Below are positions 10,801 through 45,764 of a stretch of DNA of 64,000 bases, piece after piece. Position 1 is the first letter of the stretch. Each line of letters starts with the position of its first letter. A model generated the notes under the pieces. That model was not told where the DNA came from, did no database searches, and saw nothing but the letters and a program-made list of their open reading frames with translations. This DNA is from Asterias rubens (lineage: Eukaryota), in NCBI RefSeq assembly GCF_902459465.1, contig NC_047070.1:16616001-16680000 (forward strand). The letters are read 5' to 3'. The position numbers and the translations under genes were made by a program.

Positions 10801-11159
10801 ACACCTAGTCAACAAAGACAACAACATCACAATAATAGCATTACATGTCATTTTTATTATTATTCCATCAAATACAATTTCCATCAACTGCATGATTAAG
10901 CACAATTTCACGACAGGCTTCTGCGATACAAACAGTGTGTACATCATGGGATTTGATTTAGTTGTGAAATGTTTCTCAAAGGCTGTTTCTTGTTCTCTCC
11001 TTATTCAAAGCTTGCTGCCTATGATTCTCTGGGGCAAACGGGGAGTATATGTGAACATGTAATTGCTCTGAAACAGTCAAAGTAGATACAACAAGAGAAG
11101 GATTTACATTTCTATTTCATCAGTTCGCCTTGAAAAAGAAACATATACCATGATTCAGC

Positions 11160-11515
11160 TTAAAGACACCTATGGTAATTGTCTAAGACCAGTATCCTCA
11201 ATTGGTGTATCTCATATATAAGATGCATAAAGCAGTGAAAATGTGGACTCAATTGGTCATCGAAGTTGCAAAAGAAAAAACCTTGTTGTACAATTAATTT
11301 GTTTACTTTCAGATGCCGAAAAAAGGCTTCATGCCTGAAGTATTTTAATATTGAGCGAGAAATAACCCCGTACTCAAATACGCTATAGCTACTTCAGAGG
11401 GAGCCGTTTATCACAATGTTTTATACTGTCAACAGCTCCCCGTTGCTCGTTACAAAGTAAGTTTTGTAAACTAACAATGATTTTGAGCAATTGCCAATAG
11501 TCTACAGTGGCTTAA
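11160..11515 (+). mobile_element. Non-autonomous DNA transposon (MITE), TTAA-flanked with AG termini, Kolobok-like; near-complete copy
   Basis: TTAA|AGACAC..TATGGTAATT at the left end and AATTGCCAATAG..GTGGC|TTAA at the right end form imperfect TIRs. Partial copies of the same internal sequence lie at ~322-510, ~3560-3680, ~5274-5543, ~40025-40130, ~51170-51310, ~54360-54460 and ~61691-61885. Confidence 0.65.
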
Positions 11516-26832: not shown

Positions 26833-29800
26833 TCAAACCAGTTTAATGGCGCCATCCTGATCCCTCGGCCCATTCGCTATCGCAACATTATGTTCATACT
26901 CGTCCCTCGGCGACTCATTAAACATTGGTATAGATGCGAAAGGTGTTAACGTCGCGTAACATCTATCACAGTTTGAATGAGCTATGGGCGGATAATGCTG
27001 TCGATAACACACAAACGTAACACCAAAACCAAGTAGTGAGCCAATAACAACATCTGTGGACAAAAAAAATATGTCCTGTCTTGAGATCACCGGGGAGTTA
27101 CAATTTTATTCATATTTGGGACAATTTCAACAAACAAAGATTTATTTTAAATGTGAATCTATCCTAATTGCTAAGCCAAGTGTGATCATAAAACAAAATC
27201 TGCTCTCGCTTTACGATAAATCAAGCCTAGGCTAGCCTATTGTTTTTATTAGGCTTTACATTATATCTACTCCTTGGTAGTATAATATAATGCAAGACAG
27301 CTCTCTAAAGCTATGTCTAAAACCCTATACCACAATAGTGCTGTACACTATTCTACCTACAATATGATTTTACCGACATTACAGTGTGATGTCACAAACA
27401 GATTCTGATAACCCGTTTTACGATAAATCAAGCCTAGATTCTCATATAGTGCACCGTGTAATTAACCCATGAAAGCAAGACAGTTCTCTAAGGAACAAAA
27501 TCTACCTGACAAGTAGACACACACACATGTTGTTACCACAAACTGAATCGATATTGATACCTAACCATGCAATGCCTCAAATCCATAGTAAACACTATAG
27601 TGCTGTACACTGTTTTACAAACCATAGATGTCAATTTTTGCATTAAGTTTAAAGAATGCATTTTTTTTTGTTTACACCTACACCAATGTGTAGTAAGCAC
27701 TGTATACTCAGTACTTTTATTGGTTTTGTGATGAAGCAATGGTAAATTACTCGAGTGGGATTCGAACCCACAACCTTTTATACTGTTCCAAGTTTCTTGT
27801 TTGAACCCAGAGGAGTAAATTGAACACAACACCATCCCAGCCCTTGTTGTTTTTCATTTATACACCTAGGTGTAGAGAAGCAAGCATCTTACTCAAGAAC
27901 ACAAGTGTAGAGACAAACACATTTATGTAACAGGGGGGGGGACACCTACAACACAGGTCATTACCAAGAGTTGGTTCGTTATATAGCACACATATCCTAG
28001 AAGCTAGATCAAGGTGATTATCCCTATACGTTTGGCATACTTTTAGAAGACTCCTCCAACTCCCTAGGGAGCTTACAAACTCCAAGCTACTGAAATTCGC
28101 CCTAGAGAAGCCCTTAATCAAACACAATACTCAGTCACGAGTCACGATTTTGTTGGTCTATTGAAGCCTGCTAATTTACTTCCTCAGTCTGACAACTATC
28201 ATAGCGACTTGAAACTAAATGTCATGATTTGGTTTTTCTATTGAAGCCTGCTTGTGTACATCCTCAATAGGACCTTGCAACTAAATGTCACGACTTCTTG
28301 GTTTTTTGAAGCCTGCTAATGTACATCCTCAGTCTGACAACTATCATAGCGACTTGAAACTAAATGTCATGATTTGGTTTTTCTATTGAAGCCTGCTAGT
28401 GTACATCCTCAATAGGGCCTTGCAACTAAATGTCACGACTTCTTGGTTTTTTGAAGCCTGCTAATGTACATCCTCAGTCTGACAACTATCATAGCAACTT
28501 GAAACTAATTGTCAAGATTTGGTTTTTCTATTGAAGCCTGCTAGTGTACATCCTCAGTCTGACAACTATCATAGCAACTTGAAACTAATTGTCACGATTT
28601 GGTTTTTCTATTGAAGCCTGCTAGTGTACATCCTCAGTCTGACAACTATCATAGCAACTTGAAACTAATTGTCATGATTTGGTTTTTCTATTGAAGCCTG
28701 CTAGTGTACATCCTCAGTCTGACAACTATCATAGCGACTTGAAACTAAATGTCATGATTTTGTTGGTCTATTGAAGCCTGCTAGTGTACATCCTCAGTCT
28801 GACAACTATCATAGCGACTTGAAACTAAATGTCATGATTTTGTTGGTCTATTGAAGCCTGCTAGTGTACATCCTCCGTCTTAAAACAATTATAGCGACTT
28901 TAAACTAAATGTAACACTTTTGTTGGTCTATTTAAAGAACACTTCTACCAAGTCTTATCTTTAACTACAAAACCAACACAAGATTTCAACCAAAAGTTGT
29001 TGACATGTTGATGACAAATTGCTTTGTGAGCAATCAGTTTTACTAAGATGAAATCAGGATGCTGGTAAGGGACAAATAAGAAAGGAGCTTACCTTGCCAG
29101 TGATGATGGTAATCAGCCGTTCTTGAAAGAGCAATCAGCATGGCTGATATAACAGGTGCGGCTGCAAGGCACAGCCTCCAGGAACTCCCACGACCCTGGG
29201 CCTCAAAGCAGCGTAGCTTGCCTGCCAGGTACAATGAGGCAAAACCTAGACCAGCAAATGCAACTGCAGAAAAAGAGGGGGGGGGGGAGGATGAAAGAAA
29301 AGTCAAGTTCATTATTCTAAATCATTTAATGTCCATAAAATGAAAATTTCCATTGTCAAAATGCTCACAAAAAAATAGTAATTACAAATTTCAAACTGCC
29401 ACATACATAAAAAAAACCATGAATTCCATACTTTGGTAAATTTACCCGATTGACATTATGAAGCAGTAGGCCTCAGTGATTTGTGGATAAAGATGTTAAA
29501 ATTCATAAAAAATCAAGCAAAACTGATGCGTTGAGTGCGTTGAGGAGGCTTTGAGGTTGATTAGGATCAACAAAGCAAAGTGTGATCCCCTGATCCACCT
29601 CTTCCGAATGATCTACATGCACAGTAGCAGATACAGAGCTTATAATTGTAGCTAATAATAATACTGGGTTCTTATATTGCGCTTTATCACACGCCTAGGG
29701 GCATATCAAAGTGCTCAGTAATAGTTCCTGCAAGGTATGTGGAGTGGAGCTAAGTATATGAGACCTATTCCTTTATAGCACCCTTGGTTTACAAGATGCT

Positions 29801-32800
29801 GTAGCGCACCAGGAACACCAGGGTGAGCCCCTTCTATTTACAATAAAGCCTGTAAAGCCTGGTTCATACTTCCTGCAAATGCAAAAGCAAATTTGTTGTC
29901 ACATATTTCGCAGGAGTTGAGCTAATATAAATCTCTGTTGCAAATTTGTGAGGTCAAATATCATACACCATTAGCAGGAAGTATGAACTGGGCTTAGTGA
30001 GTCAGCTTGGTGTTCACAGGTCTAGGCCGTTACACAATGCCTGTCTTGCGGTTGACTCATCTTAGATGAGGAGACCTTGCCCTCAGGAGTGTGTGGGAGT
30101 GGGAAATCACCTTGGATAATCATCTCAATTGCTATATCATCAATCATTAACAGGCCTTGTACTTAAGCTGGTTTTATAAGTAGCCCACCAGGCTATGAAC
30201 TTAATATTTTTACTTTATATCTTTGATGTGCTAACAAAACTGACCACAATGAAGGCCCAAAATCCTAATGTTGCTTCAGCACAAAAAGAAGCTTCAAAGC
30301 ACAACAACATTGAGATTTACCAGAATAAGGTTACCAGTCAAACTACCATGTCACCAAGTCAATTTATGACTGGTATCCAGCTCCATTTTCCTTAGCAGAA
30401 AATTCTACACACACTAAAAAATGATTAAACACTTAACAAAAAAGTAGGTTGCATAGTTTTTAGTCGCCCACACGGTCAAGTGGTCTTGACCAGCCCAGGC
30501 CTGATACTTAACGGAGGCAACAAAGTTGATTGCCTCCATGCCCCCTGGTCACTGCCTTGATGCCCATAAAATGCTCCAGTAGAAATTTAAAATGTTCCTC
30601 TTACGGTGCCCTTAAACAAGACGAAAATGCATTGGTGCCCTTGCCCTTTCAAAAACTAAACATACATGCCTGCCAGCCCATAGCTATTTTTACTAGACAA
30701 TTCTACTCCTCCCGCTCGTGTTAATTGTGAGCCCTTCTGTCTAGTGTTACATGAAAGCAATTTTTTCTATTTGTTACCATTAATTAGTTTAAAAAACAAC
30801 TAATATGAAAGAGGCTTCCTCCTGTTTCAACAAGCCGCCCACACAGTCACACAGTATGTAAATGTTCATTTAATGAAGAACATTCAGAGGTAACATCGCA
30901 ACTGGATAATATTTGCTGAAGAACTTAGGCCAACAAAAGTGTCAATATTAGTGTCAGCATGCTGGTTGTAACATCTTTAGCAGCTTGCCAAACCACCATT
31001 CTATTATTACTCAATGTTGATACTTTACGGAGGCATTGCTGGCAATCACCTCAGTTGCTCCTTATGCCTTGATGCCCCATACACATTCAACAAAGGGGTG
31101 CCTTTTACAAATGAGAAAATTCAAAAATGAAGCATCGGGCCCGACTTCTATGATAGCAAGACATATTATGTTGTTTTAAAGATGCTATACTAGCAATAGG
31201 TTAAGGAGCTGGTTAGGGTACAGGTGGTTTAGTTAAGGAGCTGGTTACATGAGGTTAAGGAGCTGGTTACATGAGGTTAAAGAGCTGGTTAGTGTACAGG
31301 TAGTTATGGAGCTGGTTATAGGTAATGTGCTAGCTCTATGGTTAGGTGAGTGGTGACCTGGTTATAGGTGGTTAAGGAGCTGGTTAGTGTGTAGTTGAGG
31401 AGCTGGTTACAGTTATAGGTAGTTAAGGAGCTCTTGTAGGTACATGTTGCAAGCAACGGGGCAGGTGGTTCTGGTGCTGGTTATTGTACATGGTTAAGGT
31501 GTAGGTATCCAGGTGTACTAAGTATAAAGTATGTGCTCAGCCGCAATTAATCACATTTTGTTGGCATCTCTTTTATGAACAGCATATTGAAAATCACTGA
31601 AGTTACAGTTAATGCAATAAGTTGACCACCCAGCCTGATTTCAATGAAGAATAAGAACTACTGGGGTGTGTCAAATACAATAATCTAAGGTGCGCACCAA
31701 ACAAACAATGTGTAGATTTTGGTTCAACTTTAATTTTGAGCCGCATTGACAGACAAGGTTTTAAAAGACATGAGTCAGGTTGGATGGTCCACTATTCCCG
31801 TTGAGGAGTCTTATATAATAAGAGTACAAGGCTAAAAGCGCTTCTAACTGGCTGTCAAATGAAATTTATATCAGGTGTGATGGGTTTAGATAGCCATGGG
31901 GTTATTACTTGTAAAAAACAACAAACTGGAATGGAACTTTGGTAAAGATTCTCCAATAGGGAAGTTTTGTTTTTTAAGGAACAATACAAAGGAAATCCGT
32001 TGCTTTAGGGCCCACTGAAAATTGTTCTGGTTTGAAGTTATTGAGTTGACGTCCTGACTTTAGTCCACTGTCATTGGTAACTATGTATCACTTCAAGTTT
32101 GTCTTTGAAATCAAATATGACTCATATTGTTGGAAATGCCATCACACCCAAACCAATGCCAAATGGTGATCACTTCTATGACACTATCACTGAAGTGTTT
32201 TACAATTTTTCAATTTTGGGGTTGAACAAAGAAAAATTGACTAGAGTGGGATTTGAACCAATGACCTCTGGATTATGACTTGGATAGCTCAGTTGGTAGA
32301 GCGCCGGCACATTAAACCAGAGGTCGTTGGTTCGAATCCCACTCTAGTCAATTTTTCTTTGTTCAACCCTAAAAATCATTTAACAATTTACCCAGTTAAT
32401 TTCCCTTGTGGTTTAAATTGATTTTTCGATTTGGTAAAAATCATGGTATTTTACTGAAACACAATATGTAGACCCTTGTGCGTTGACATTTTCAAAAACT
32501 TGAGGCATGAGGTTTATAAAGTAACACAAGCATGGAAGTTTGTCTTGAGAGTAATGTACATTTTGTACGCTTTCACAAGTTTGTTATGCACGTTTTGGGA
32601 TAAACCAAGTGAGGATACTGGTGTTGGAAGATTACCCTGCCTTTAAGATTTACCTCATTCATCAAATGAGTTACTCATATATAAAAATGTCAAGTATTAA
32701 GGTATGTGTAACATTTTCTGTGCCACATAAACAGTGGACAAGTTTTTTTTGTGTTCCAATTTCCATTCTGACAGACAAGAATTTGACTTGAGTCATGTTG

Positions 32801-35800
32801 GATGGCACACAAGGAGAAGGTCTTACGTAATAAACAGTCCAATAACAGTACAAGGCCAACAGTGCTTACATGTTATAACTGGCTGTCAAATGAAATCTTC
32901 ATCAGGTCTGCCAGGGGTCCTGATGAGTTCAGATTGCCATGGGGTTATTTAATTGTAAAATACAACTGGAAGAGAACCCCGCAGGCAGAGCTTGTTCCAA
33001 TGAAGAAGGTTATTTTAAGGAACAATGCAAAGGAATTCCATAGCTTGAGGGCAAAGGAAATTGTTTTGGGTCGAAGTTATTTAGTTTTCAAAGAGGCGCT
33101 ACAAGGTCACTAAAGCTTTTGCGATTCACTTTTTTTTTAAATAAAGAGTCCTTATGAAAATAGAAAAAACACTTCAAGTTTCTAATCTTGCTTTCAGTGA
33201 GATGTAATTTCATTTGATACAGTGTTTTGTAAGGTATTTGTTTACATATGTAATGTCTGTTTACTCTTGTAGGCCTATTTGTTGTGTTTCACCGTATTCC
33301 ACGAACTGACACCAACCTTGTCTGACAGCGCTCTACCAATTGAGCTATCTAGCCCTAAGTTGACAGCCTCCCTATCTTGTCAATATTATTGTTCCAGATG
33401 CCACTCAGAAGCCATACAACCTTTAACTGCCATACAGCCAGGGAGCACCCCCAAATTTACGATACTACATTTACAAGTTGGAAGCAGCAACAGAGGGCTC
33501 ACCTTAACGGAAGGCGACTTTGATTTCATCCAGGGTTTAGGCTTTTTACTTGGTATTTAAGTAAACCTGACTCATTTTACTTAATAATGCCATCACAGCT
33601 CAACCAATGCCAAAGGTGATCTCACTTTTCCAAGGAGAAAAGAAGCCAACATCCGCTTTGAAATGGTTGAATATAGTTTACAATGCATGACCAAGTATAA
33701 ATCAAAAGGATTTGGAAATCAAATTAGATTTCTTATAAACTTTAGACAACAATCAATAAAGAATCAAGCGAGACAATGTAAGTCAATAGTGTATAAAAAT
33801 ATTGTCCTTCAAGTTGTACGATCACACCATTTATCAATTGATGAGCCATACGTATTGAACACAAAGGTCAATTTTATGCTCATTCGAAGGCATCAACAGA
33901 GGGCGCTGTTACATTCAAGAAGTGGGTCCATTTTTCTATGTAGCAAATTTATTCTTGAACACGAGGAGTAACAGCTGTCCTTTTCATATTATGATCACTT
34001 AACCCCCAGTCTGCCCCAGCAAACAAACTGCTCTGGAGTAGGGGTAAGTGGTAAAACACCGGGGTATTCTTGTAACGTGCAACCAAAACCCTGTGGAATG
34101 GGAACACAGTGCGCCAAGGTAACCATGGGATAACAAAAAGTCCCAGAGCCTCCACTGGGCTATATCTTACAAGGAATAAGAGCAAGCCTGATGCTTATTG
34201 GAGCCAATGAAGGGGGATTGCCTCCATGACCCCTGGTCATTGCCTTGGTGCCCTTGAAATGCTCCAGTAGAAATTAACAATTTCCTCATAGGGTGCCCTT
34301 TATAATAGAGAAAATGCTGCCCTTTGTCTTGCAAAAAAAAAGAGCACAGAGGCAAGAAAGAAATACATGTATAGTGTGAAAAGGGCTTAGGATTAGTGTG
34401 TAAGTTTACTCACATGATGAATGGCCACTGGGGAAACTTTTCCGCCCTTCTGTAATCGTATCAGCATCTCCAGTACACTTCATATCCAGTGAGGTCTTGC
34501 CATCAGGAAAGCATCGCCAGAAAAAGTCAGGTCTTGGTCTGTGGCATAAAATAAACAAACAAGATTCAAAGATTGGTTTGGCAAAGTCACACTAAATTTA
34601 AAAAAAAGGGCCCAATTTCATAGAGCTGTTAAGCAGAAAATATTGCATAGTAAATTACTTTGCTATACAAAAAGTAACTGGGGCACCAGTTGCAACAATG
34701 TAAATTTTATGGCATTTTGGCTGGTAACCGTTAAGCATTATTTTCTGTGCTTAGCAAATATCAATGCTTACAGGCTTTATGAAATTGGGCCCATGTTTTT
34801 AGAATGTTTTAAAAGCCATACAGTGCAATCCGGAGCATTCTATATGGGTTTCTCTTTATAAAAAATAAAAAAATGAAAACAAATTGTGGGAATCCTGCTC
34901 TAAATACTCAAACCAATTGATAGTCATCCCACAAATATTCATGAAGGGATGTGTAAAAAAAAAAAAAAAAAAAATTCTTCTTACTTGAGGCATTTTCATT
35001 AACCAAGTGACTTTTTACACTCACTTCATTATGATAAATCCTTGGGCAGCATACAAGCCATTGTTTCGAGCAGTAATCTGGAGGGTTCAAAATCTAACTC
35101 TAGTAAATTTGTCTTTAATCCACCCAAATTTAACTTGGGGAACTCTTTATCATCACCATTCAATACTCAGGCATTTGTCTGCTGGCTTAAAAGAATTAGA
35201 GGCTTTCTGTCAAAATATTACAAAATGAAGATGGATGCATCACTTACCTTCCCACAGTAAGCTTGATACAATTAGTTATTACTCCATTCAGTACCAGGGC
35301 CAACGTAACCGCTGTGACAAAAAAACACCACATTTTAATTTTGGTTTGAGATCATTTAAAAAATCAACACTGTAGGAACTTGCAAAGTATCTTTTCTGTG
35401 TAGCGCCTTCTCATGGTTTTTATTGTTTAGTGTTTTTGTTGTTTTACAAGATGGCTGCAAGTGAGGTTTGTCATGGATAAATAAAGTTAGTTCAGTTCAG
35501 TAAGTAATTGTCTCAAAGATTGGTTATAACAAACACCCTTGGAAAATGAGCCACAAGACTACATGTATACGGGTCAACAGATCTACAAGACATTTGCTGT
35601 CCCTCACCCATCTTGGGGTTTATTGTCTTGTATTTTGTTATCGCCAAATAAAATACTAATATAAATAATAATAATATTTGCCAAAATATTTGCCAAAACA
35701 CCTTGCCATTATGCTTGGAAGAAAACCCCTAAACGAAAAGGCAACAAACAACAACAATAAACAATGAAACTCACCTAGAATCGCCTGGTGTGTGTCCTTT

Positions 35801-37087
35801 TTATCTCTTCTAATGATGGCAAATATTGCTATGATAGTCAGTGGTACCACAGATATTATTGTCTGAAATAAAAAACATAAACAAATAAAAATTATTTGCA
35901 ATTTGAAATAGGTGCAGATAAGAGAAATAAGTTTAACGGAAATGAGATAACAAAACTGAAATTATTTCCAATTACAGAATAAAAGTGCACAGTTCCACAA
36001 CAACAGTGTATTTCCTCCAACAAGAAAAAAAAACAGGCTTGTCAAATTAGGCATGCCTATTCACCCTATTGCGTGAATACTGGCATGCGCTTGGGAAACA
36101 ACAAAATAAAAGCAAATGCTTTTGTTTTGTTGTTTACCATGTGCATTCTAGTATTCATGCACAGGGCCAATGTTGGCACATGATAGGGAGTGAACCAGTG
36201 AGAATTCAGCTGTCAATCATCAATATGTAGGAGGTAAAGTATTATCGGCAAATTTCTTCTCCTGTAATCTGTCTTCACATCACTCAGGAAATGTTGCATC
36301 ATAAGAGAACCATGGGAAAACCACCTGAGTTTATGAAAACAATCCCGGGCCCAATTTCATGGCTGTGCTTACCGCCGAATTCTGCGCTTACAATCACCAT
36401 TCTCCGCTTACTGTGCAAGTACCAAATGTCTTCTCAAGCTGTGTAAGTGCAGAATTCTTTGTAGCCTTGAGTAGACATGCGCACAATCGCACATGCAAAG
36501 ATTCTCTGCATCTGTGTGAAATAAGCTTGAGGTAAGCATGGAAGGTGCTGCTTACAGTAAGCAGGGCCATGAAATTTGGACCAGACCAGTACCAGGATAG
36601 ACTTACAAAGAGTGCACGTGTTGTAGTGTAGCTACTGGTGACTGGGTTTCTATACAACCACATCTCCTCAGGTTGAATGATGCGATGAAATGGCTCCAAC
36701 TCTTCAGTCACTCTGTCAAAGTAAAGTGAACAAATATCAATCATAGATCTTTCATTTCAAAATATCTCAGCTCGAGTTTTGTCCAACCCAGATTGGAAAA
36801 ACAAACCAGGTTGAAAAACTATGGAAAGCCACAAATGCAAATCGCTACTGTTTGAAAAAAATGTAGCAAAAATATTCAAACATTGTGCTGATTTTGTTGA
36901 CAACAAAACACTAATTATGGGAGCCCCTTCTTTTGGTGAAATTGCTCCACACATCTTACTCTCACAGTGCTAAGACAAAAACAGGAGAAATTTATACTCA
37001 CAGAAAAATTGCAAAGAGACCAAGCCGGACGGAGATTTCAGACATCATCTTAACTGCTGAAGGATTCACAATACAGCGCCAACCCAT
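26833..37087 (-). CDS. PLPP4: Phospholipid phosphatase 4/5-like (PAP2 family, PPAPDC1-type), 7 coding exons, 273-286 aa
   Basis: Exons on the minus strand: 37087 (or 37048)-37002, 36712-36607, 35862-35775, 35311-35248, 34538-34414, 29263-29093, 27053-26833. All are GT-AG with matching phases 2,0,1,2,1,1. The protein reads [39 protein letters not shown]..., with intact PAP2 motifs C1 KLTVGRPRP, C2 SFPSGH and C3 [16 protein letters not shown]4 versus PLPP5 cannot be resolved; it is probably a co-orthologue of both. Confidence 0.92.
28140..28935. repeat. Minisatellite with 80-bp and 65-bp unit variants (PLPP last intron)
   Basis: TTGAAGCCTG at 28161, 28241, 28306, 28386, 28451, 28531, 28611, 28691, 28771 and 28851. 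Confidence 0.93.
30498..30660 (+). repeat. Second dispersed repeat family (GGCCTGATACTT..GGAGGCAAC..GTGCCC)
   Basis: Related copies at ~13515-13695 (inverted), ~13940-14000, ~23420-23495 and ~34190-34345 share CCATGCCCCCTGGTCAxTGCCTTGGTGCCC..AATGCTCCAGTAGAAAT. Confidence 0.6.
31195..31440. repeat. Low-complexity tandem repeat (GGTTAAGGAGCTGGTTA variants)
   Basis: Repeated GGAGCTGGTTA cores with variable spacers. Confidence 0.8.
32213..32420 (+). mobile_element. tRNA-derived SINE-like element fused to an inverted partial copy of itself (PLPP intron)
   Basis: A-box TAGCTCAGTTGG (32285) and B-box GGTTCGAATCC (32329). 32213-32274 is the near reverse complement of 32311-32376. Other family copies lie on the minus strand at ~33320-33550 and ~56195-56330. 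Confidence 0.65.
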
Positions 37088-38412
37088 GCTGGGAACTAAT
37101 GCGTCAGCAACCTACTGATGTACAGCAGTTGCTACTGATGACCATGCGTCTTAGGACAGGTTGTAAAATTAAGTTCAATCAAAGTCTCTTGAAGGTGTTT
37201 CAGGTTCTGAAAAGACAGAAAAATACCAATAATAATCATTCATCACAGAACAAAGTGCTTCAACCATACTGCACCAGAAAAAATGACAAATATAATTTAA
37301 TTATCCTCTTCCATGAATTGACTGATTGCTCGTTTTGTTGTAAAGTGCTCTAGTATATGACCTTCACTTCGAAGGATTCGATAATTGCACCTACCCGACC
37401 CACCCCTAATGGTAACACCATACCCAGTCCCAGTCAGTAAAGTTTCCATCCAGCCACAACTTTTTCATTTAAAAAAAAATGAGTGAAAGTGGTGGCAGGA
37501 TACGGAAACATTCCCAAAGAAAATATTGGGAACTACTGGCATAGAGCAAGGTCACTATTTTGAATGATTGTATCAACACTAACACTAAAGACGTTTTCGC
37601 CCATTTTTGGCGGTGTGGTCAGCCAATCCAAGCCCAAGAAGTAGTGACAAGATTTGCCAGTCAGTTGTTTACCATTTTTAACAAACAATATTTTGATAAC
37701 AATGATTTATACGGACACGTTACACACACCATGAATGGTTGTACTTATTTGGCCTTATTTGAATATAGAAAGATAGACAGAGGAAGGAAAAGACCTTCAT
37801 GCACACACATAAACTAATATTAAAAAACAGAAGTATGTCCTTAACAAAACAACACTTCCAACCTAAACAGTTTGCAGTGCAAAGTACACCGACCGAGTGC
37901 TGTGTTGTGATGTTGTTTGGTCAATAACTCAGAGGTCGGACATGGTCGGACTATCCAAGTCCTTTTTTCTCAATAATCTGCACTATTATACACTCCTTCT
38001 TCCTTTTCAATATTAATGTAATACTGTAGTTAACAGCCACAATAAACCAAATAATGTACTTACATTTTGGAGCAGACAACATTATTTCTGACACTTTTGA
38101 CAAGACGACACGTTTCCTCACAGGTTTACACGTACAACTATTCGTATGCTTGTGGAGCGGATCGGGTACCAGTGAGATATGAATGAACTTTGACCTCATA
38201 ACGTTTCCATGTCATCAAGTGACGCTCGATTCAATTGACTGCACAGCAGGTCCATCGGACATTACAGGTGCACGGTGGAGGTTTTTCACCTGCGGTCCTG
38301 AGACGAGCTGTGATATTTTTTTTTTAACAAACTTCCTTGTAGATATCTTCAAAATATACAAATAAACACGTAACAGCAACAGCTCGAAAGGACATGGACT
38401 ATTTATTTCACT

Positions 38413-39992
38413 ATGGCGTGGGAAATGTCTTTAGAGGCGTACCAGGCTGCCTTAATTCTAGCTGGCTGTGGGGATGCTTTGGGTTCAGGTAGCAAAGCAA
38501 CCCTCAAAGAGATTGGTGTAGTAGAAAACATTGATGTCAAACCAGCACATTGGCCAGTCAGCCAGAACACCGTGTTGCATCTGGTGACCGCCGAGGCTCT
38601 GGCCACCGGTCACCATGCTGAAAGTTTATGGCCGGAGTTTGCAACTCGTTACGTGGACTGCATGTCAGCTTCCATGATGTCCAACCGGAGACCGAGTACC
38701 AGTATACTTCGGGCCACTGCTCGCCTGAGACCGTCCGAGACACAGGGATGGGAGTTGCCCTTCGACGGGTCCCGGACGGCCATTGAAGCCTATCCCACCG
38801 CCCGTTCAATGTGCATTGGACTTCGGTACCACAAACCCAGCCAACTTGGCTCTCTCGTAGCAACAGCTGTCGAAAGCGCTCGGATGACACACCACCATCC
38901 AACTGCCTATCTCGGGGCCGTGACATCGGCACTTTTCACGGCGTACGCGGTCCAAGGAAGGGAGGTTCGCGAATGGGGAGCCGGACTTCTCCAAGTGATC
39001 CCAGAGGTGCTGGGATACATCATCTCCACCGGAAGAGATGTTGATGACAATCAAAGAGAATGGTGCTATTTTGGGGACACGTGGAGGGAGTACGTCGCCA
39101 TGCGGGGTATCTTAGATGGCGAGAGCAGGCCAAAGTTCCCCCGGAGGTATGGAGCAGAGAGACGGCGTGAGGTGTATCAGCGATTTGCGGCAGATAACAT
39201 GGTTCCCGGAAGATGTGGACACGATGCACCCCTCATTGCGTAAGGAAAACTCTGATTTTTGGCGTAATATTTCTTTATCCATTCGTTATTTTATCTTTCC
39301 TTTCTAATGATCCAAAATACAAAATTACAGGTAAGCTGTAGGCAAGTGTGCTTACAACAAGCCCCCTCCTTCCCATTATTATGTCAAACAGTGTACATGT
39401 ACAACCTTCTTCTGATATAGCGCCCTCTTTGAACCATCCTCCCACAGCCCATAGTAGTTTCTTATTTGCGGGGACAATCTCCAGCGGACAGGTTTCACTG
39501 GGAGACCGCCCCGAGTGGCCGCATCTTCAAGATATATCAACTTGCATGATACCCGTAATAGTTCACTAATGACTTATGGTTTGTATTTTATTTTGTTGGT
39601 ATACCAACGTTTTAAAACTTTGCAGTTTTTGAATTTCACAAGAAATTACCCTACTAGAGGTCGAAACGTCAGGCAATTAATAATGTATGCATTTATACCA
39701 TAGGTCCCTTTTGTTTGTTAGCAGTTTGCAACGAGTATTTTATCAAAATTTACTACGGATACATTTTTATATTTTCAGCTACGATGCTTTACTGTCCTCA
39801 GAGTCCTGGGAGGACCTTTGCAACGGAGCCATGTTCCACGGCGGTGACGGTAGCTCAAGCGGGTCCATTGCGGCAAGCTGGTGGGGGCTCATACACGGTC
39901 TGATCGGCGTCCCTGACCGGCATCACACTCAGGTCGAGTTCAGAGACAGACTTCTCGATGTTGGAACTAAACTTTATGCAATGAGCTTCTAA
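38413..39992 (+). CDS. ADP-ribosylhydrolase family protein (ARH1/ADPRH-ARH2/ADPRHL1-like), 346 aa, 2 exons, probably catalytically inactive
   Basis: Exon 1 is 38413-39239, the intron is 39240-39778 (GTAAGG...TTTTCAG), exon 2 is 39779-39992; 1041 nt in total. Family motifs: AAxxLxxxGDALG, WPVSxxTVLHLVTAEAL, ARSMCIGLRY, THHHPTAYLGA, GHDAPLIAYDALL, FHGGD, WWG. The catalytic SDDT reads SQNT and DSDS reads DGSS. Confidence 0.9.
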
Positions 39993-41252
39993 TGTTATGC
40001 AAGTAACCGCAATTGTGTGCTTCCAGGTGCCTACAAAGACTTCAGGCCTGAGGTTTTTTATATCAGATTAAAATTAGTTTTTTTTTACCAAGTTTCTTCA
40101 GAGAGAGCCGTTTCTCACATTGTGTTATAAACAGGTCTTTTTTTGCTAGTAGATATTTTTTTAGTACCAACCATATTTGTCTATTGCCTTTGAATTAGTT
40201 TCCCATGGCTCTTCGCATAGCAACACGCACAATATCCGCGCCACCCTGCCGCCATTTTGGGACTCCGAAATGTACACAAAGAATATTTAGTCCCGAAATA
40301 GTGGAAATAGTCGACGTGCATTGGGTGTTGCCGTATGCTTTGGCACAATCTCTGTTTAAAATTAGAAGGGTAGGGACATATCAACAGAGAATATGTATTG
40401 GAAACTATCTTTACTGTTATTTGTAATCTTTAACTTTCCAAATTGCACAAACCATGCATCTTTGAATTTAGTTTTATGACAACAAAGTGGTAGCTATATA
40501 TTGACGCAAATTTCGTCGGCTTTACTCCTTCCAAAAATGTGTACATAATACGGTTTCAGCAACTTCAGTGTAAGTGTTATATTCATTATTAAAACTTTGA
40601 GTGTGTGCTTATAAACGATGACAATTCTTTTTAAAAGGATAATTTTATTTCAGTTTATAATATTGTTGTAGTAGGCCTACACATAAAATATTGTGACAAT
40701 CGTTGTTGTTTTGTCTGTGCACCATGTTATGCTTAAAAAAAGGAGTGGCATGACGTCCATTTAATTTTTGTAATTCGCCAATAAATCACCGTTTATAAAT
40801 AATACAATTATTTTGTTTTTCTGTATGCAAAGAGAGTAGGTGTATGGAACACTTGTTGTATGTGTGTGTTGTTGGGCCAAAAGCACTAGCCATCCCCAAG
40901 CCTTTGCCCTGCCCCTCCCCTTTTAAATCACCGTTTTTTAAACCTTAGTCAACCGATCTATGATATTTTCTAAAGAATGTAATTGTCTTGGACAATATCT
41001 ATTATAATATATACTTTTTAAATGACTTATTAATTGAGCAATATACATTGTGTCAAACATTGTTTAAATTTCGACATGAAACAATAAATTAACGTGCAAA
41101 TGAGAAAACAAACTTTCATTTGATCTTGTTTAGACATAAATCCACGGGAAAATGTATAGATAGTTATTTTATAGCAACGAAAGTTGTCGCTGTATTATAA
41201 CGACAAGACTCCTTTTGTATAGTTACGTAAATTGGAACAGAAACCTCGAAAT

Positions 41253-42992
41253 TCATTTCCGTTCCTGTTCAGGACGGCTTATATTCCTGTGTCTCGAATG
41301 CATCGCCATAACGACGGTAACCGTGACAACATAAACAACGATTTCAAATATGGCCAGCACAACTAGAACTTGCCAGTTGTTGAATACAGTCCAGTGGATC
41401 CCATAGCTGAGAGCCTTACTGCTTGTCGGTTTGGTGCTTCTCTCTAACCGGCTGGTCCGCTCGTCCACACCGGTATTATCTGAGATAGTTCTTGGGAGGG
41501 TGGCAGTACTCTGGTCATCGTCTGGCAGGTTGCTTTTTCTGGTCTCGTTTATAGTAGTGGATTTTGCGTCACCGACTTCGACTTTCTCTTTGTTAAGAGG
41601 TGTCTTTTGATTTGGAAAAAAAAATAACAATGTTCTAAATAATAGTCTTCAAAGAACACATCAGGAAAGGCGTCGGAGATTGCATGCAACGCCATTGCAT
41701 TCAACGGATTCACAATAATCTATAACGCATGCAGATTGTGCATCCATAGGACACTATAATAAGTTATGAATCAGTAAATAAAAAAAAACCGAGAGAAAAC
41801 TGTCCCCATAGGCTCCAATTTGTTAATTTAGATTTTGCGGAAATCACAAACAAAACACAAACCACTCGAGGTGTTTACTCGAAAACCCGACCACTCGATT
41901 TAATTAAATTTGTTTTCCTCTATCTTGAAAAATAAAAGTGATAATTAACTCAAACTGTTTATTTGTCGTGCATTTTATAAACCAATTTCACTACAAAGTA
42001 ATTAAATATGTATCATACAAAATCATAACGAAATGACGGAGCTTTTACTAAAAATAACCAGCAAGATATCATAATAAAATGAACGCCTCCATGTGAATGT
42101 TAAAAACATTTTTACGACCATAAAAAACATAACTATACTATAATGTGGTTACACTGCACATTTGGTTCCATATACGTTTTCATTTATTATTTTCATAAAG
42201 GCCTTTTTTTGACAGCCTTACCTTTCCAGCTGTCGGATCTGAGTTTTCCAAGGTATAACTCAGTTGTCGTGTCACGTCTGTCTGCAATGGCGTTTTGGTA
42301 GTTGATGCATCTGTGATGTAAACAAATTGTCATTATTAACTCTAATGTAGAATCGTGTAAAAAGGGGTTGGGGTGTGGGTTGGAATAAGAGAATTGATAA
42401 TAAGATTCGCCGTGGCTATAGTACACGAAATATCAAACTACGTTCACACATACATGAATTTGACAACACGTACAAATCTATTTTGAGAGCAGTGGTGGCT
42501 ATGAGAAGAGCCTGTCTGTACTCCTCGACACTATGACCGAAACGAGGAGTACAAACCGGCCCTTCTCCAGAGCCACCTCTAATCACATAAGAGATTTTCA
42601 GGGTGTCATCGCAAACCTACTTGCCTTAATCGTGTCACATTCACACATTCTCAAATATGCATCCCTGTAGAGATATCTTTTGTTCTTTCCATTGTCCCTG
42701 TACTTAAGATTTTCATATAGACTTCGTACACAAAATTTCTTGTGGAGCACTCGGTCTTTATATTTTCCCTATGGAGTCCTTTTATTTTCCCGTTTTTGTT
42801 TTGTCCTTGGTCCAGTCTCCCTAGGTACCCAACATGAGAGCATTTTACACAGGGGCCTGCCCTACACAAATATACATTTATTACCAAGCTTAAATTTTAC
42901 TCACTCGTTATTCCAGTGTTTTGAATCAACACGAAACTACCTGCCGTCACAAGCCAGAAGAGACATGAGATTTTACATTCCACCCCGTGCAT
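41253..42992 (-). CDS. Putative small single-pass type I membrane protein (about 163 aa): signal-like N-terminus, Ser/Thr-rich stalk, TM helix, short basic tail
   Basis: Exons 42992-42941 (MHGVECKISCLFWLVTA, phase 1), 42310-42222 (DASTTKTPLQ...DPTAGK, phase 0) and 41603-41253 (TPLNKEK...WQVLVVLAIFEIVVYVVTVTVVMAM-HSRHRNISRPEQERK*). Splice sites are canonical and in frame. No family recognised. Confidence 0.5.
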
Positions 42993-45764
42993 CGTGCTGG
43001 CTTCAGTCACTCTATGGGTCCATCATAAAGGGAGGAATGTTTATCTCGAAGGGAGGAATGTTTCTCCAATTTTTTTTTCTAAAAAAAAACAAATTTGATC
43101 GTATTTACTCGTCGCAACACGTCAATGAACGGCAGCTATGCTGACTGAAGCGCGGGAACGACTGGTGCAGGTCTTCTTCGACCCAGTTTGTGCATGGCTC
43201 TGCAAGAATGCATTGTTCAAAATTAATCAGCCGTCAAATCTTAAATAAGGTAGAAGGAATAACGTCTCAGGACAAAACCATTAAACAAAAACATTAAACC
43301 TTTGGGTTAGGAAAAACAACATTGTGGGGATGTTTTTTCTGTGGTGCTGGCAAAAAAATTCTGAACGGCGTTTTTCGGTGACCGTGTTGTTAAAGTTAAA
43401 GCTTATTGTCACAGCTTTTAATAAAGCACACACAATCACACTTCTTACTTTAAAGAACAAGGAAAGGCTATCCAAAATACACAGTGCCTGCACTATCAGT
43501 TCCACTAATTAACCAGTTTGAAATTTCACTTGGAACAATGTCCCTTTGATGATGGCACAGCGCTTTCTCAATGGCGTAGGCCTACAAGCTGGTAAAATTC
43601 GTGAAATTCCATTTCGTAAAATCTGCAATGGCTATCATATACATGTTATCATACAACGTGTGTCAAACTCACCATTGCTTCTTATGATGCAGTCCTTAAT
43701 TCCCCCCTGCTTATTCACCAAGGCAATGACGCTTCCTGAATACAAAAAACACTGTGCGAGCAGTGGCGTGACAAATTCCACTAATGGACACATTTCAAAG
43801 ACAAAATTTCTCCCCAAACAAAATGGCTGTGGCGACTGGCTGATTTTCACCTTGAGCACAACGTATATCATTAAGTTCTTAATGGGATTTTGAGAAGCGA
43901 TTGATGCGTAGTTACTGCAACTGAAGTGGTCTGGATATAGACACGGAGGTTGTGACAACAGGTTGTTGGAGGGTAGTCTTTGTACATGGCGGTGTTTTAT
44001 ATCCGCTAATGGTTCTGCCCCAAACAGTCTAGGAATTGCGTCGTTTTAAAGGTGATTCAGAGATTGACTGTATCAAAGTGATGCAAATTTATAGGCAAAT
44101 TTATAGAAAGATACGGAAAAGGTATGTAAGGCAAGGTTTTAGTTTAATAAACAGTGCCTAATAACTGGGGGGGGGGGGGGGGGGGCTCGCCATTCACAAT
44201 AAAGTTTTTGTAAAATGCGCGCGAGACTGCATTCATTTGGGTACGTTGATTTGAATCATCTTATTATGATTAAGGCCAATTATAAGACGACATAGCCGTC
44301 TGATAATATTTTCGAAGCTGCGAATAATGAAGTGGGGTTGTTCTATACTTACAATATTAAGGATTGCGTGTACTCTGAAATTTATGCTGGGTCGATTCGA
44401 GTAATGATAAGAGTGTACAGAAAATTTCATTGTTACGTGAACCAAGACTAATTTCTTAGAAATGGATGAAAGGAAGATATTTCCTCATAATTGCGCAGTA
44501 TACTTCGCCAGCGTGTCAATGCCATTCCAGCTCGTGAAATAAAACTCATTATAGACCTAATGAGAATAGTAAGGCAAACACAATTTAAATTCAAGTGTTA
44601 AGCAGCTATGGTGCAGTTAAAACCCGTTGCATTATAAAATGGTTGTACCACGGTGGATTGAGCGATCTATTCGCAATGCTCGAACACACCAGTACGCGAG
44701 TATTTGACGAGTTTGTGATCAATTCACAAAGCCTGTAAGAACAAAAGCCCTCTCAGACAAGGAAAATCTTGCTTAGCAAAAGCAGGTTAGCAGCCAACAT
44801 TCCATAAAGTTTACATTGTTGCGACTGCTGCCCCTACTCTTCATATATATCCGTTAAACAGCTTTATGAAATTGGGCCCTGAATATACAACAGGGACTAA
44901 CAAAATGAGCCAGAAACGCAGCTACATTATTATTTCTAACTATTTTGTTGTATTAGTGTTTTTATTATAACAAATGCACAGTGGTAAAACACTACCCGGG
45001 TATTTTGTTATATTTTCATAACGCACTAATACAAAGAACAAGGCCTATAAACATTTGACTTAAAAGCGACTATTAAAACGAATGATTCAATATAAGAAGT
45101 ACAGGTTCTAATCAAAATGCTCCACAGTAATAAAGTTGCATGGTCCGATTTCGCCGAAATACATTTTTCTAAGCAATTGTTTACCTTTGCGAAAATTTGG
45201 ACACCCCTCAAAAATCTAGGGCTGGGTGAACGATTATGACTGAATCTTTTTTTTCAGTTTCAAACGTTTTCGTTTTTTTTTACAGATTTCGTAGAATTCT
45301 TACTACAATTGCCATTTTGCATGCTTTTAAAGAAGGGAAAAAAAAAAAAAAAAAAAACAATGGCATGGTCATTACTAAAGTTTGACAATACCTTTAAACG
45401 ACAGCTTATAATTTTCTTGAATCTATGATCTCTCGAAATTTAAATAATTTGAATCGAAATCAGCCAAAAATCGGACCTGGCATCTTTAATATTATAAGAT
45501 TGTCATACATGATACTTCTTAAACAGTAACACTTTTGTGAGTGCATAATAATAACATAGCACATTCTGCAGAAAAAAACACACACAAAAACACATATTCA
45601 ATTTCGAGGTCTTTGGTACGTATGTGCGTATGAATCACTTCAAACTAAGGTCTTGTGCGCATGACGTCATCGACGTGACAAGTGAACAATGGAGGGTCCA
45701 CGATCGGCGGCCATTTACCATTATGTTGTGTCCGTGTCTATAATGTTCTGATGTGATTATACTA

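What the first reader, a model, noticed from the sequence alone, without database searches (positions are those of the whole stretch)
38413..39992. Invertebrate ADP-ribosylhydrolase pseudoenzyme resembling, but distinct from, vertebrate ARH2 (ADPRHL1)
Seen: an intact 346-aa two-exon ORF, with SQNT (38560-38571) in place of SDDT and DGSS (39846-39857) in place of DSDS. The segment after GDALG is short (SGSKATLKEIG), suggesting a deletion of roughly 10-15 aa. Established: human ARH1 needs D55/D56 and D302/D304/S305 to bind two Mg2+. Vertebrate ARH2 is an inactive paralogue (SDNT, ESAA) needed for cardiac myofibrillogenesis. Inference: three of four acidic ligands are lost yet the frame is preserved, so the gene may be selected for a non-catalytic role. 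The substitutions differ from ARH2, so this is either an independent pseudoenzyme origin or an older ARH2 lineage than usually assumed.
Basis: partly seen in the sequence, partly recalled or inferred. Interest (0 to 1): 0.7.

Follow-up and report, generated by a model that had tools for sequence, protein, structure and literature searches.

The report
Echinoderm-wide dead ARH1-family enzyme
This starfish gene encodes an intact, transcribed relative of the ADP-ribose-removing enzyme ARH1 that has lost its metal-binding and substrate-binding residues, has been kept by selection in all five echinoderm classes, and lost activity separately from the vertebrate heart pseudoenzyme ARH2.

Summary
Window 38413-39239 plus 39779-39992 (+) is a two-exon, 346-aa ARH1-family gene of an Asterias sea star.

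- **Active site.** Three of the four Mg2+-ligand aspartates are replaced (D55Q, D56N, D304S; D302 kept). The ADP-ribose-contact residues are gone too, and 11 residues are deleted after GDALG.
- **Expression.** The splice joint is in transcript contigs from two species.
- **Selection.** dN/dS is 0.13-0.15.
- **Fold.** A model of the 98%-identical orthologue superposes on human ARH1 at TM 0.93.
- **Age.** Orthologues with the same kind of damage exist in sea stars, brittle stars, urchins, sea cucumbers and a crinoid. They form one clade (100/100 support), so inactivation dates to the echinoderm stem. Former active-site positions are now the least conserved part of the protein.
- **Active paralogue.** A canonical ARH1 lies elsewhere in the genome (contig C7).
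- **Relation to ARH2.** An exclusive clade with ARH2 is rejected (AU p=0.0145). The best trees place it beside the vertebrate group ARH1-like + ARH2, whose ARH1-like members are still canonical. Inactivation was therefore independent of ARH2.

Its function is unknown, and I found no paper describing it. Databases label it "ARH1-like" hydrolase. I rate it a new variant of a known kind, of moderate interest.

The parts
38192..38412 (+). 5' untranslated region. The most upstream transcript contig starts at about 38192. A short out-of-frame upstream ATG lies at 38394.
   Evidence: table 8 (X7 record 20 covers 38192-39239; X1 and X3 contigs start at 38290/38280); sequence
38413..39239 (+). Coding exon 1 (residues 1-275 plus the first two bases of codon 276). 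It ends at a phase-2 GT donor.
   Evidence: joint 39239->39779
38485..38517 (+). Shortened segment SGSKATLKEIG (residues 25-35) after GDALG. The Asterias-specific 11-residue deletion lies between K28 and A29. The canonical W-E-F motif, which holds critical residue E25, is absent.
   Evidence: E25 listed as critical in PMC9738213
38560..38571 (+). SQNT (S50 Q51 N52 T53) in place of the Mg2+-binding motif S54-D55-D56-T57 of human ARH1.
38683..38697 (+). NRRPS (residues 91-95) in place of canonical GRAPG. G100 of ARH1 is S95 here.
38776..38805 (+). TAIEAYPTAR (residues 122-131) in place of the glycine-rich substrate loop GGCGAAMR (G127-R134). It is two residues longer and has no glycine.
39190..39225 (+). 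A260-D261 ... G266-R267-C268-G269-H270-D271: the loop that carries Y263, S264, W266, S269 and S270 in ARH1. All five substrate-cleft residues are replaced.
   Evidence: residue roles from PMC7390403
39240..39778 (+). Single intron (539 nt, GT..AG). Position and phase (..IA|YDA.., phase 2) are shared with three other sea stars, the crinoid, the urchin and the canonical ARH1 of this genome.
39779..39992 (+). Coding exon 2 (last base of codon 276, residues 277-346, stop TAA at 39990-39992).
39846..39857 (+). DGSS (D299 G300 S301 S302) in place of the Mg2+-binding motif D302-S303-D304-S305. The next residue, S303, replaces the invariant T306.
39993..41500 (+). 3' untranslated region, at least to 40008 (X1). 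Contigs in X3 and X7 run on past 41500, but these may merge with the convergent minus-strand gene downstream.
   Evidence: table 8 (records 2, 16, 22)
38064..38119 (-). First exon of the divergently transcribed PAP2-family gene. Its 5' end lies about 70 bp from the ARH transcript start, so a shared bidirectional promoter at about 38120-38191 is inferred. Context only, not part of the ARH gene.
   Evidence: joints 37206->38064 and 36712->37002, CT..AC; PAP2 by Pfam; same arrangement

Best explanation
The gene encodes a catalytically dead member of the ARH1 branch of the ADP-ribosylglycohydrolase fold family, that is, a pseudoenzyme. It arose in the echinoderm stem lineage and has been kept under purifying selection in all five living classes.

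Shown here: the ARH1 fold is retained, the gene is spliced and transcribed, and selection acts on the protein as a whole. Constraint has been lifted specifically from the former catalytic centre. Three of four Mg2+-ligand aspartates are gone in Asterias, and D55, D56 and D304 are gone in every member. E25, the G128-C129-G130 loop, G100, W266, Y263/S264 and S269/S270 are also gone. A separate canonical ARH1 elsewhere in the genome presumably supplies arginine de-ADP-ribosylation.

Inferred: the protein neither binds two Mg2+ nor hydrolyses ADP-ribosyl-arginine. It probably does not bind ADP-ribose in the canonical way either. It most likely works as a binding or scaffolding protein through surfaces of the conserved all-helical fold.

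Inferred from trees: it descends from an old deuterostome paralogue lineage. In vertebrates that lineage gave the still-canonical 'ARH1-like' genes and ARH2. Its inactivation was independent of ARH2's.
For: Gene model and family.

Expression: the joint 39239->39779 (GT..AG) occurs in contigs of X1 (A. amurensis-like) and X7. In X7 the exons stand at k-mer depth about 208 and the intron at about 4.6.

Selection: NG86 dN/dS is 0.147 for A. rubens vs A. amurensis (8 nonsynonymous of 24 changes; neutral expectation 77%; P=8e-6). It is 0.129 for Acanthaster vs Patiria (dS 0.56; P=5e-27).

Fold: AlphaFold model of P0001 with pLDDT 95.2 and pTM 0.94; TM 0.92-0.93 and rmsd 1.6-2.1 A to human ARH1.

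Clade: sea stars, brittle stars (Amphiura), urchins (Lytechinus, Diadema), sea cucumbers (Holothuria, Apostichopus) and a crinoid (Anneissia) form one clade at 100/100. Conserved gene order (PAP2 | ARH | small gene | D8C_UMOD) and the same intron confirm orthology.

Site table: 22 of 22 canonical sequences keep D55, D56, D302, D304, G128, C129, G130, W266, S305 and T306. All 11 clade members lack D55, D56, D304, the G128-G130 loop and W266. All 10 members that cover the C-terminal site carry T306S, and 9 of those 10 carry S303G.

Conservation: active-site positions score 0.55 against 0.67 for the rest in the clade, but 0.91 against 0.72 in canonical proteins.

Canonical ARH1 with VSDDT, GRAPG, GGGCGAAMR and GGDNDSTG lies at G000 C7:16992175-16999228.

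Independence from ARH2: AU rejects an exclusive clade with ARH2/ARH2b (p=0.0145, dlnL 23). The clade with ARH1-like + ARH2 + ARH2b has 96/96 support. With ARH2 removed, the clade with ARH1-like has 98/96. ARH1-like keeps all motifs, and ARH2b keeps DSDST/ESDAT/DSEST.

Roles of the residues: PMC7390403 and PMC9738213.
Against: No biochemical data exist, so inactivity is inferred from residues alone. D302 is kept in Asterias, and several classes keep Glu at position 55, so weak or altered metal binding is not excluded. Former active-site residues are stable within sea stars (QNT and [D/E]GSSS in four species), so a class-specific use of the cleft is possible.

The first two trees left the backbone unresolved. 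The AU values against an echinoderm-only duplication are marginal (p=0.035-0.058). The 28-row clade was named only after the tree had been seen.

No hemichordate or other non-echinoderm member was found, which an old paralogue would predict unless it was lost there. No synteny links the gene to vertebrate ARH1-like.

The expression evidence comes from assembled contigs, with no tissue or quantity information. The structure was modelled on the A. amurensis orthologue, not on the window's own protein.
Confidence: 0.8

Rival explanations
1. It is the echinoderm orthologue of vertebrate ARH2 (ADPRHL1). On this view the ARH2 pseudoenzyme lineage, including its inactive state, predates the echinoderm-chordate split.
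For: Both are long-branched, inactive ARH1-family proteins. In the smaller data set an exclusive clade was not rejected (AU p=0.246). Both fall in one supported clade together with ARH1-like (96/96). Position 56 is N or G in both sea stars/crinoid and ARH2.
Against: With better sampling the exclusive clade is rejected (AU p=0.0145, dlnL 23.1). In the best tree the vertebrate groups ARH1-like + ARH2 + ARH2b are together and the echinoderm clade is outside them (test D). Canonical ARH1-like sits in the same clade, so the common ancestor was canonical. ARH2b keeps DSDST/ESDAT/DSEST and one teleost ARH2 keeps ESEAT, so ARH2 lost residue 304 inside vertebrates. The ARH2 hallmarks are absent: retained D55, GRRPD, SGFGAATK, the GRRGHDAP di-arginine loop and the long C-terminal isoform.
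Confidence: 0.07
2. It is a younger, echinoderm-specific duplicate of the canonical echinoderm ARH1. It diverged fast after losing catalysis, and its apparent affinity to vertebrate ARH1-like/ARH2 is a tree artefact.
For: No member of the clade was found outside echinoderms, and the two hemichordate proteins are canonical. It shares the ..IA|YDA.. intron with the canonical gene. The early trees were unresolved, and this placement was not rejected then (p=0.21). The stem branch is long (0.46-0.56).
Against: AU p=0.035 (with echinoderm canonical), p=0.058 (with all ambulacrarian canonical) and p=0.0385 after removing ARH2. The clade with short-branched ARH1-like has 98/96 support without ARH2, under a site-heterogeneous model.
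Confidence: 0.25
3. It is still an enzyme. Either it is a hydrolase using a rebuilt, metal-poor or single-metal site, or it is a neo-enzyme with a different substrate.
For: D299 (=D302), H270/D271 (=H272/D273) and the H-H-H-P motif are kept. Most classes have Glu at position 55, and urchins have E-E at 55-56. The cleft residues are stable within sea stars. The ARH review notes that even ARH2's inactivity may reflect the model substrates used (PMC9738213).
Against: No acidic ligand is conserved across the clade: position 55 is Q/E, 56 is N/G/E/S, 302 is D/E/Q/A and 304 is S/R/N/K/H. The former active site is the least conserved part of the protein (0.55 vs 0.67), the opposite of the canonical enzymes (0.91 vs 0.72). 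The substrate-binding glycine loop, W266, Y263/S264, S269/S270 and E25 are all lost. The segment holding E25 has suffered independent deletions in Asterias, sea cucumbers and the crinoid.
Confidence: 0.08
4. It is a decaying or neutrally drifting copy whose open frame survives by chance.
For: It has lost catalytic residues and carries an 11-residue deletion.
Against: The frame is intact in at least 11 species of five classes. dN/dS is 0.13-0.15, with P=8e-6 and 5e-27 against neutrality. The gene is spliced and transcribed. Gene order and intron are conserved. The fold model is confident.
Confidence: 0.01

Closest known systems
ARH1 / ADPRH (ADP-ribosylarginine hydrolase; human structures 3HFW, 6G28, 6IUX)
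   Same: Same fold (TM 0.92-0.93, rmsd 1.6-2.1 A, 40% identity) and the same length class. Structural-core motifs such as RMTHHHPT, GHDAP and IAYDA are kept. The intron before YDA is shared with the sea star's own canonical ARH1.
   Different: D55, D56 and D304 are replaced by Q, N and S. E25 is deleted. G100 is S. The G127-G130 loop is replaced by a longer glycine-free loop. Y263, S264, W266, S269, S270 and T306 are replaced. The active site is the least, not the most, conserved region.
ARH2 / ADPRHL1 (vertebrate cardiac pseudoenzyme)
   Same: Both are ARH1-family proteins that lost Mg2+ ligands yet are kept by selection. They probably derive from the same old paralogue lineage. The idea of a non-catalytic role for an ARH fold applies to both.
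   Different: The substitutions differ: ARH2 has SDNT, GRRPD, SGFGAATK, GRRGHDAP and ES[AGS]AT, and this gene has SQNT, NRRPS, TAIEAYPTAR, GRCGHDAP and DGSSS. ARH2 keeps D55 and the G-x-G-A-A loop. ARH2 has a di-arginine loop essential in Xenopus (PMC7390403) and long isoforms of 700-1900 aa. An exclusive clade is rejected (AU p=0.0145). Inactivation occurred separately.
Vertebrate 'ARH1-like' genes (fish, amphibians, reptiles, lungfish, sharks; for example Xenopus LOC495095)
   Same: They are the nearest vertebrate relatives in the trees (98/96 when ARH2 is left out). Length is similar, and they share the WPVS context.
   Different: ARH1-like proteins keep every catalytic and substrate motif (SDDT, GRKPG, TGCGAAMR, GRSGHDAP, DSDST). 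No shared gene neighbourhood was found.
Other degenerate ARH1-like copies in bivalves (Mercenaria P0067, Dreissena P0081, unnamed P0071)
   Same: They are further examples of loss of the SDDT/DSDS ligands within the ARH1 family.
   Different: They are unrelated lineages that branch with molluscan ARH1s. They are single-species observations and are not shown here to be old or constrained.

Membership tests
ADP-ribosylglycohydrolase fold family (Pfam PF03747) | Significant match to the family profile over the whole domain | tested here: met
   Exon 1 scores 90.8 bits (profile positions 1-215). Exon 2 scores 31.8 bits (positions 241-287). The cut-off is 26.2 bits.
ADP-ribosylglycohydrolase fold family (Pfam PF03747) | All-helical ARH fold | tested here: met
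   Model of the 98%-identical orthologue P0001 has pLDDT 95.2 and TM 0.93 to human ARH1. ARH3 and DraG follow at TM 0.6-0.75.
ARH1 (active ADP-ribosylarginine hydrolase) | Two Mg2+-binding motifs, 54-SDDT-57 and 302-DSDS-305 | tested here: not met
   The motifs read SQNT and DGSS, so 3 of 4 Asp are lost. They are invariant in 22 of 22 canonical sequences (PMC9738213).
ARH1 (active ADP-ribosylarginine hydrolase) | ADP-ribose contact residues (E25, G100, G127/C129 loop, Y263, S264, S269, S270) | tested here: not met
   All are replaced or deleted (residue list from PMC7390403 and PMC9738213).
ARH1 (active ADP-ribosylarginine hydrolase) | Hydrolysis of alpha-ADP-ribosyl-arginine | not testable with these tools
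   This needs a biochemical assay.
ARH2 / ADPRHL1 | Falls inside, or as exclusive sister of, the ARH2 clade | tested here: not met
   AU p=0.0145 against the exclusive clade. The best tree puts it outside the vertebrate ARH1-like + ARH2 + ARH2b group.
ARH2 / ADPRHL1 | ARH2 signature residues: D57 kept with N58, D100, S128/F130, di-arginine loop R271-R272, E302/A304 | tested here: not met
   Window residues are Q51/N52, S95, no G-x-G loop, R267-C268 (S-C in the other sea stars) and D299/S301 (PMC7390403).
ARH2 / ADPRHL1 | Multi-exon gene with an optional very long C-terminal extension | tested here: not met
   It has two coding exons and 346 aa, with a stop directly after the domain. ARH2 representatives are 700-1900 aa.
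ARH2 / ADPRHL1 | Heart or striated-muscle expression and a role in myofibril assembly | not testable with these tools
   Only assembled contigs of coded runs were available, with no tissue information.
Pseudoenzyme (general definition) | Homologue of an active enzyme that lacks catalytic residues, is expressed and is under purifying selection | tested here: met
Pseudoenzyme (general definition) | Demonstrated lack of catalytic activity | not testable with these tools
   This is inferred from sequence only.

The most novel reading that the evidence does not exclude
The ARH1-like/ARH2 paralogue lineage had a second, non-catalytic job already in the deuterostome ancestor. That would explain why it lost catalysis independently at least twice (echinoderm stem, vertebrate ARH2) while staying under strong constraint. 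The echinoderm protein would then be a functional analogue of ARH2, for example acting in actin or muscle assembly. Alternatively it may work together with the PAP2 lipid phosphatase that has been transcribed divergently from the same short promoter region since before crinoids and sea stars split.
Probability: 0.12. Interest if true: 0.7.

Novelty: new variant of a known kind. Interest (0 to 1): 0.5.

Why it matters
ARH2 has been treated as the single, vertebrate-specific pseudoenzyme of the ARH family (PMC7050489, PMC4990356, PMC7390403), and its mechanism is still unclear. A second ARH1-family pseudoenzyme that was inactivated independently and is roughly half a billion years old shows that this fold is repeatedly recruited for non-catalytic work.

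It offers a natural comparison: what two independent dead versions keep in common points to the non-catalytic function. It occurs in animals with tractable embryos (Patiria, urchins).

It also corrects database labels. These proteins are annotated as 'ADP-ribosylhydrolase ARH1-like' or 'ADP-ribosylarginine hydrolase', and they should not be counted as hydrolases in surveys of ADP-ribosylation systems.

Tried and rejected
- **Sequencing-run search.** The first search failed because the machine was busy; the retry worked.
- **Early trees.** The quick tree and the first careful tree left the backbone a polytomy. The first AU tests rejected neither ARH2 sisterhood (p=0.246) nor an echinoderm duplication (p=0.21). 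Resolution came only after adding brittle-star, sea-cucumber, hemichordate, canonical echinoderm and more vertebrate sequences.
- **Synteny as an independent test of the link to vertebrate ARH1-like.** Takifugu ARH1-like lies beside a recent tandem copy (73% identical) and an ataxin-2-like gene, with no PAP2. The Patiria canonical ARH1 has DHHC and TEX33 neighbours. This gave no support either way.
- **PAP2 neighbour.** It was not seen within 10 kb in Lytechinus or Amphiura, so the pairing is shown only for sea stars and the crinoid.
- **dS saturation.** dS between Asterias and the valvatid sea stars is saturated (about 3 or undefined), so those ratios were not used. The IQ-TREE codon run printed no omega line.
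- **Literature.** Searches for echinoderm or invertebrate ARH pseudoenzymes, and for the timing of the ADPRH/ADPRHL1 duplication, found nothing relevant.
- **Earlier scan notes.** A word search returned only unrelated pseudoenzymes of this genome.
- **Not attempted.** No complex prediction was run, because I claim no binding partner. The window's own spliced protein has no single reference, so the structure was modelled on P0001, which differs at 8 residues.
Full report
**1. What is in the sequence**

On the + strand, an ATG at 38413 opens a frame that runs to a GC|GTAAGG donor after 39239. A TTTTCAG|C acceptor before 39779 continues it to TAA at 39990-39992. The spliced CDS is 1041 nt, giving 346 aa with a single terminal stop.

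Both exons match Pfam ADP_ribosyl_GH, PF03747. The best solved relative is human ARH1 (3HFW, 6G28, 6IUX) at E about 1e-62 for exon 1 and 1e-14 for exon 2.

The alignments place S50-Q51-N52-T53 (38560-38571) on human S54-D55-D56-T57. They place D299-G300-S301-S302 (39846-39857) on D302-S303-D304-S305. They also show a 10+2-residue gap after GDALG.

**2. Organism, gene model and expression**

The closest database protein is 'ADP-ribosylhydrolase ARH1-like' of Asterias amurensis (P0001, 346 aa, 98% identical). The window is contig C10:16616001-16680000 of a 417.6-Mb genome.

I laid contigs of four public runs on 36500-41500. The joint 39239->39779 (GT..AG) appears in a 1176-nt contig of X1, whose differences match the A. 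amurensis protein. It also appears in X7, where exon contigs have k-mer depth about 208 and the intron about 4.6. The gene is therefore transcribed and spliced exactly as predicted, in two species and two studies.

The transcript starts near 38192. The 3' end is uncertain, because contigs run on into a convergent gene.

**3. Not a sea-star oddity: an echinoderm-wide clade**

The Acanthaster and Patiria orthologues (357 aa) carry GQNT and EGSSS, so only the 11-residue deletion is specific to Asterias. Profile searches of the 50%-identity and 90%-identity libraries, with names, add further members:

| Member | At the SDDT site | At the DSDST site |
|---|---|---|
| Lytechinus (urchin) | PEEG | QGNVS |
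| Diadema (urchin) | PEES | QGKVS |
| Holothuria (sea cucumber; truncated model) | QESI | not covered |
| Apostichopus (sea cucumber) | EENI | DCRAS |
| Amphiura (brittle star) | EEGT | DGRGS |
| Anneissia (crinoid) | SEGT | AGHAS |

All these proteins form one clade with 100/100 support. After them, scores fall from 577 to 416 bits, and the next hits are two fully canonical hemichordate proteins.

Orthology is backed by gene order. PAP2(-) | ARH(+) | a 185-192-aa gene(-) | D8C_UMOD(-) is found in three other sea stars, and PAP2(-) | ARH(+) is found again in the crinoid. It is also backed by the same phase-2 intron at ..IA|YDA.. in four sea stars, the crinoid and the urchin. The remodelling therefore dates to the echinoderm stem. 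From general knowledge, that is roughly half a billion years ago.

**4. How dead is the active site?**

The published critical residues of ARH1 fall into three groups:
- D55, D56, D302 and D304 coordinate Mg2+ and act in catalysis.
- G100, G127, C129, Y263, S264, S269 and S270 form the substrate cleft (PMC7390403).
- E25, S54 and S305 are also listed as critical (PMC9738213).

I aligned 22 canonical sequences (echinoderm, hemichordate, mollusc, coral, vertebrate ARH1 and ARH1-like) with the 11 clade members.
- All 22 canonical proteins keep D55, D56, D302, D304, G128, C129, G130, W266, S305 and T306.
- No clade member keeps D55 (Q or E instead), D56, D304, G128, C129, G130 or W266.
- G100 is S in 10 of 11 members. 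Of the 10 members that cover the C-terminal site, all carry T306S and 9 carry S303G.
- The W-E-F segment holding E25 is eroded in all members, and it was shortened independently in Asterias, the sea cucumbers and the crinoid.
- In Asterias only D302 (D299) survives.

The most telling result is that the conservation pattern is inverted. With one species per class, the former active-site positions have a mean majority fraction of 0.55, against 0.67 for the rest of the protein. In five equally deep canonical proteins the figures are 0.91 against 0.72. Constraint has left the catalytic centre but not the fold.

**5. Is the gene under selection?**

Yes. NG86 dN/dS is 0.147 between A. rubens and A. 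amurensis: 16 synonymous and 8 nonsynonymous changes, where neutrality predicts 77% nonsynonymous (P=8e-6). It is 0.129 between Acanthaster and Patiria, where dS is 0.56 and unsaturated (P=5e-27).

The AlphaFold model of P0001 is confident (pLDDT 95.2, pTM 0.94). The only softer stretch lies around the deletion. The model superposes on human ARH1 at TM 0.92-0.93 and rmsd 1.6-2.1 A.

Between classes the protein evolves faster than the canonical paralogue. Patiria and Apostichopus are 45% identical for this protein and 65% for canonical ARH1.

**6. A separate active ARH1 exists**

An eight-exon gene on G000 C7:16992175-16999228 is about 75% identical to the canonical Patiria ARH1 (P0011). It keeps VSDDT, GRAPG, GGGCGAAMR and GGDNDSTG. 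The genome holds no further copy of the window gene.

**7. Relationship to ARH2**

Real ARH2/ADPRHL1 sequences came from the representative search. They are teleost and tetrapod proteins, named, mostly long isoforms of 700-1900 aa. They carry WPVSDNT, GRRPD, SGFGAATK, GRRGHDAP and GGES[AGS]ATG.

A sister group that I call ARH2b (shark, coelacanth, gar; 100/100 with ARH2) still has DSDST, ESDAT or DSEST. Whether ARH2b is a separate paralogue or those species' divergent ARH2 stays open. In either case the ancestral vertebrate ARH2 kept an acidic residue at position 304.

The early trees were unresolved. With broader sampling of 56 rows under LG+C20+F+G4:
- The echinoderm clade groups with vertebrate ARH1-like + ARH2 + ARH2b (96/96), and the canonical ambulacrarian ARH1s lie outside.
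- In the ML tree the three vertebrate groups are together and the echinoderm clade is their sister.
- An exclusive echinoderm + ARH2/ARH2b clade is rejected (AU p=0.0145, dlnL 23).
- A clade with the canonical echinoderm ARH1 is marginally rejected (p=0.035), or p=0.058 with hemichordates added.
- When the long ARH2 branches are removed, the clade still joins the short-branched, fully canonical ARH1-like group (98/96). The affinity is therefore not long-branch attraction to ARH2.

Because canonical proteins sit inside the same clade, its ancestor was canonical. The echinoderm and ARH2 inactivations are therefore independent events. The different substitution patterns say the same thing.

Caveats: the larger clade was named only after the tree had been seen. 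The AU values against an echinoderm-only duplication are marginal. No non-echinoderm orthologue was found, and no shared synteny. I put about 0.6 on the old-paralogue origin and 0.25 on an echinoderm-specific duplicate. The conclusion of independent inactivation holds under both.

**8. Mechanism**

Shown: this is an expressed, constrained ARH1-fold protein with a dismantled catalytic and substrate site, existing beside an intact paralogue.

Inferred: it does not hydrolyse ADP-ribosyl-arginine. Because the phosphate- and ribose-binding loops are gone as well, it probably does not read ADP-ribose in the canonical way either. It most likely acts through protein-protein contacts of the conserved helical scaffold.

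Seven positions are fixed in the clade but differ from the canonical consensus, in human numbering: G100S, P143H, P187E, S262A, M276L, S303G and T306S. These are the obvious starting points for mutagenesis.

One contextual clue is the PAP2-family lipid phosphatase gene. It is transcribed divergently, with its first exon (38064-38119) about 70 bp from the ARH transcript start. The arrangement is kept from crinoid to sea stars, and the contig depths are nearly equal in X7 (207 vs 208) and X1 (21.7 vs 22.2). That depth is a poor measure of expression, so this is only a hint of co-regulation.

**9. Novelty**

The literature treats ARH2 as the one inactive, vertebrate member of the family. Searches found no report of an echinoderm or other invertebrate ARH pseudoenzyme. 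The proteins are in databases under automatic 'ARH1-like hydrolase' names.

This is a second, independently derived and very old pseudoenzyme lineage within a known family, so I rate it a new variant of a known kind. It is of moderate interest, and its function is still unknown.

Noticed in passing
window 29046-38119 (- strand): A PAP2-family (PF01569) gene of about 286 aa. It has the KxxxxxxRP / PSGH / SRxxxxxHH blocks, and from memory it resembles phospholipid phosphatase 4/5. It is transcribed head-to-head with the ARH gene, with the two 5' ends about 70 bp apart. The pairing is conserved in three other sea stars and in the crinoid Anneissia. It was not seen within 10 kb in Lytechinus or Amphiura.
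   Followed up: partly
window about 41300-43050 (- strand), by offset from L024:12900-14642: A small gene of 185-192 aa with no Pfam hit, convergent with the ARH 3' end. It is conserved in position in A. amurensis, Acanthaster and Patiria. Transcript contigs from the ARH 3' UTR run into it.
   Followed up: no
window 40096-40129: A stretch of about 31-34 nt in the ARH 3' UTR with enormous k-mer depth (up to about 27,000 in X3 and 12,000 in X7). Many short contigs continue from it into unrelated sequence. It is probably a dispersed short repeat or the end of a mobile element.
   Followed up: no
G000 C7:16992175-16999228 (locus L022): The canonical, presumably active ARH1 of this genome. It has about eight coding exons and all catalytic motifs intact.
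   Followed up: partly
proteins P0100, P0115, P0116 (also P0126, P0186): A vertebrate group sister to ARH2 (shark Mustelus, coelacanth, gar), some members with about 1200-1300 aa. It lost the N-terminal SDDT motif but keeps DSDST/ESDAT/DSEST. It is either an undescribed ARH2 paralogue or very divergent ARH2 orthologues.
   Followed up: partly
proteins P0067 (Mercenaria), P0081 (Dreissena), P0071, P0087, P0102: Further ARH1-family proteins with damaged SDDT/DSDS motifs in bivalves and in unnamed metagenomic or transcriptomic sources. They suggest that loss of catalysis recurs in this family.
   Followed up: no
locus L029:400-6077 and 10001-16802 (Takifugu flavidus): Two ARH1-like genes in tandem (73% identical) next to an ataxin-2-like gene.
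   Followed up: partly
window 38394-38396: An out-of-frame upstream ATG in the 5' UTR opens a short ORF that overlaps the start codon. It may be a translational control element or may mean nothing.
   Followed up: no
runs X2, X4-X6 (X2 laid): Seawater and plankton metatranscriptomes hold near-identical fragments of exon 1 and the 3' UTR. This may reflect expression in planktonic larvae or gametes, or shed material.
   Followed up: no
window codon 267 (39211-39213): A. rubens alone has Arg at the position of ARH1 S269 (GRCGHDAP), where the other sea stars have Ser. This is the first position of the loop that carries the essential di-arginine in ARH2. It is probably coincidence.
   Followed up: no
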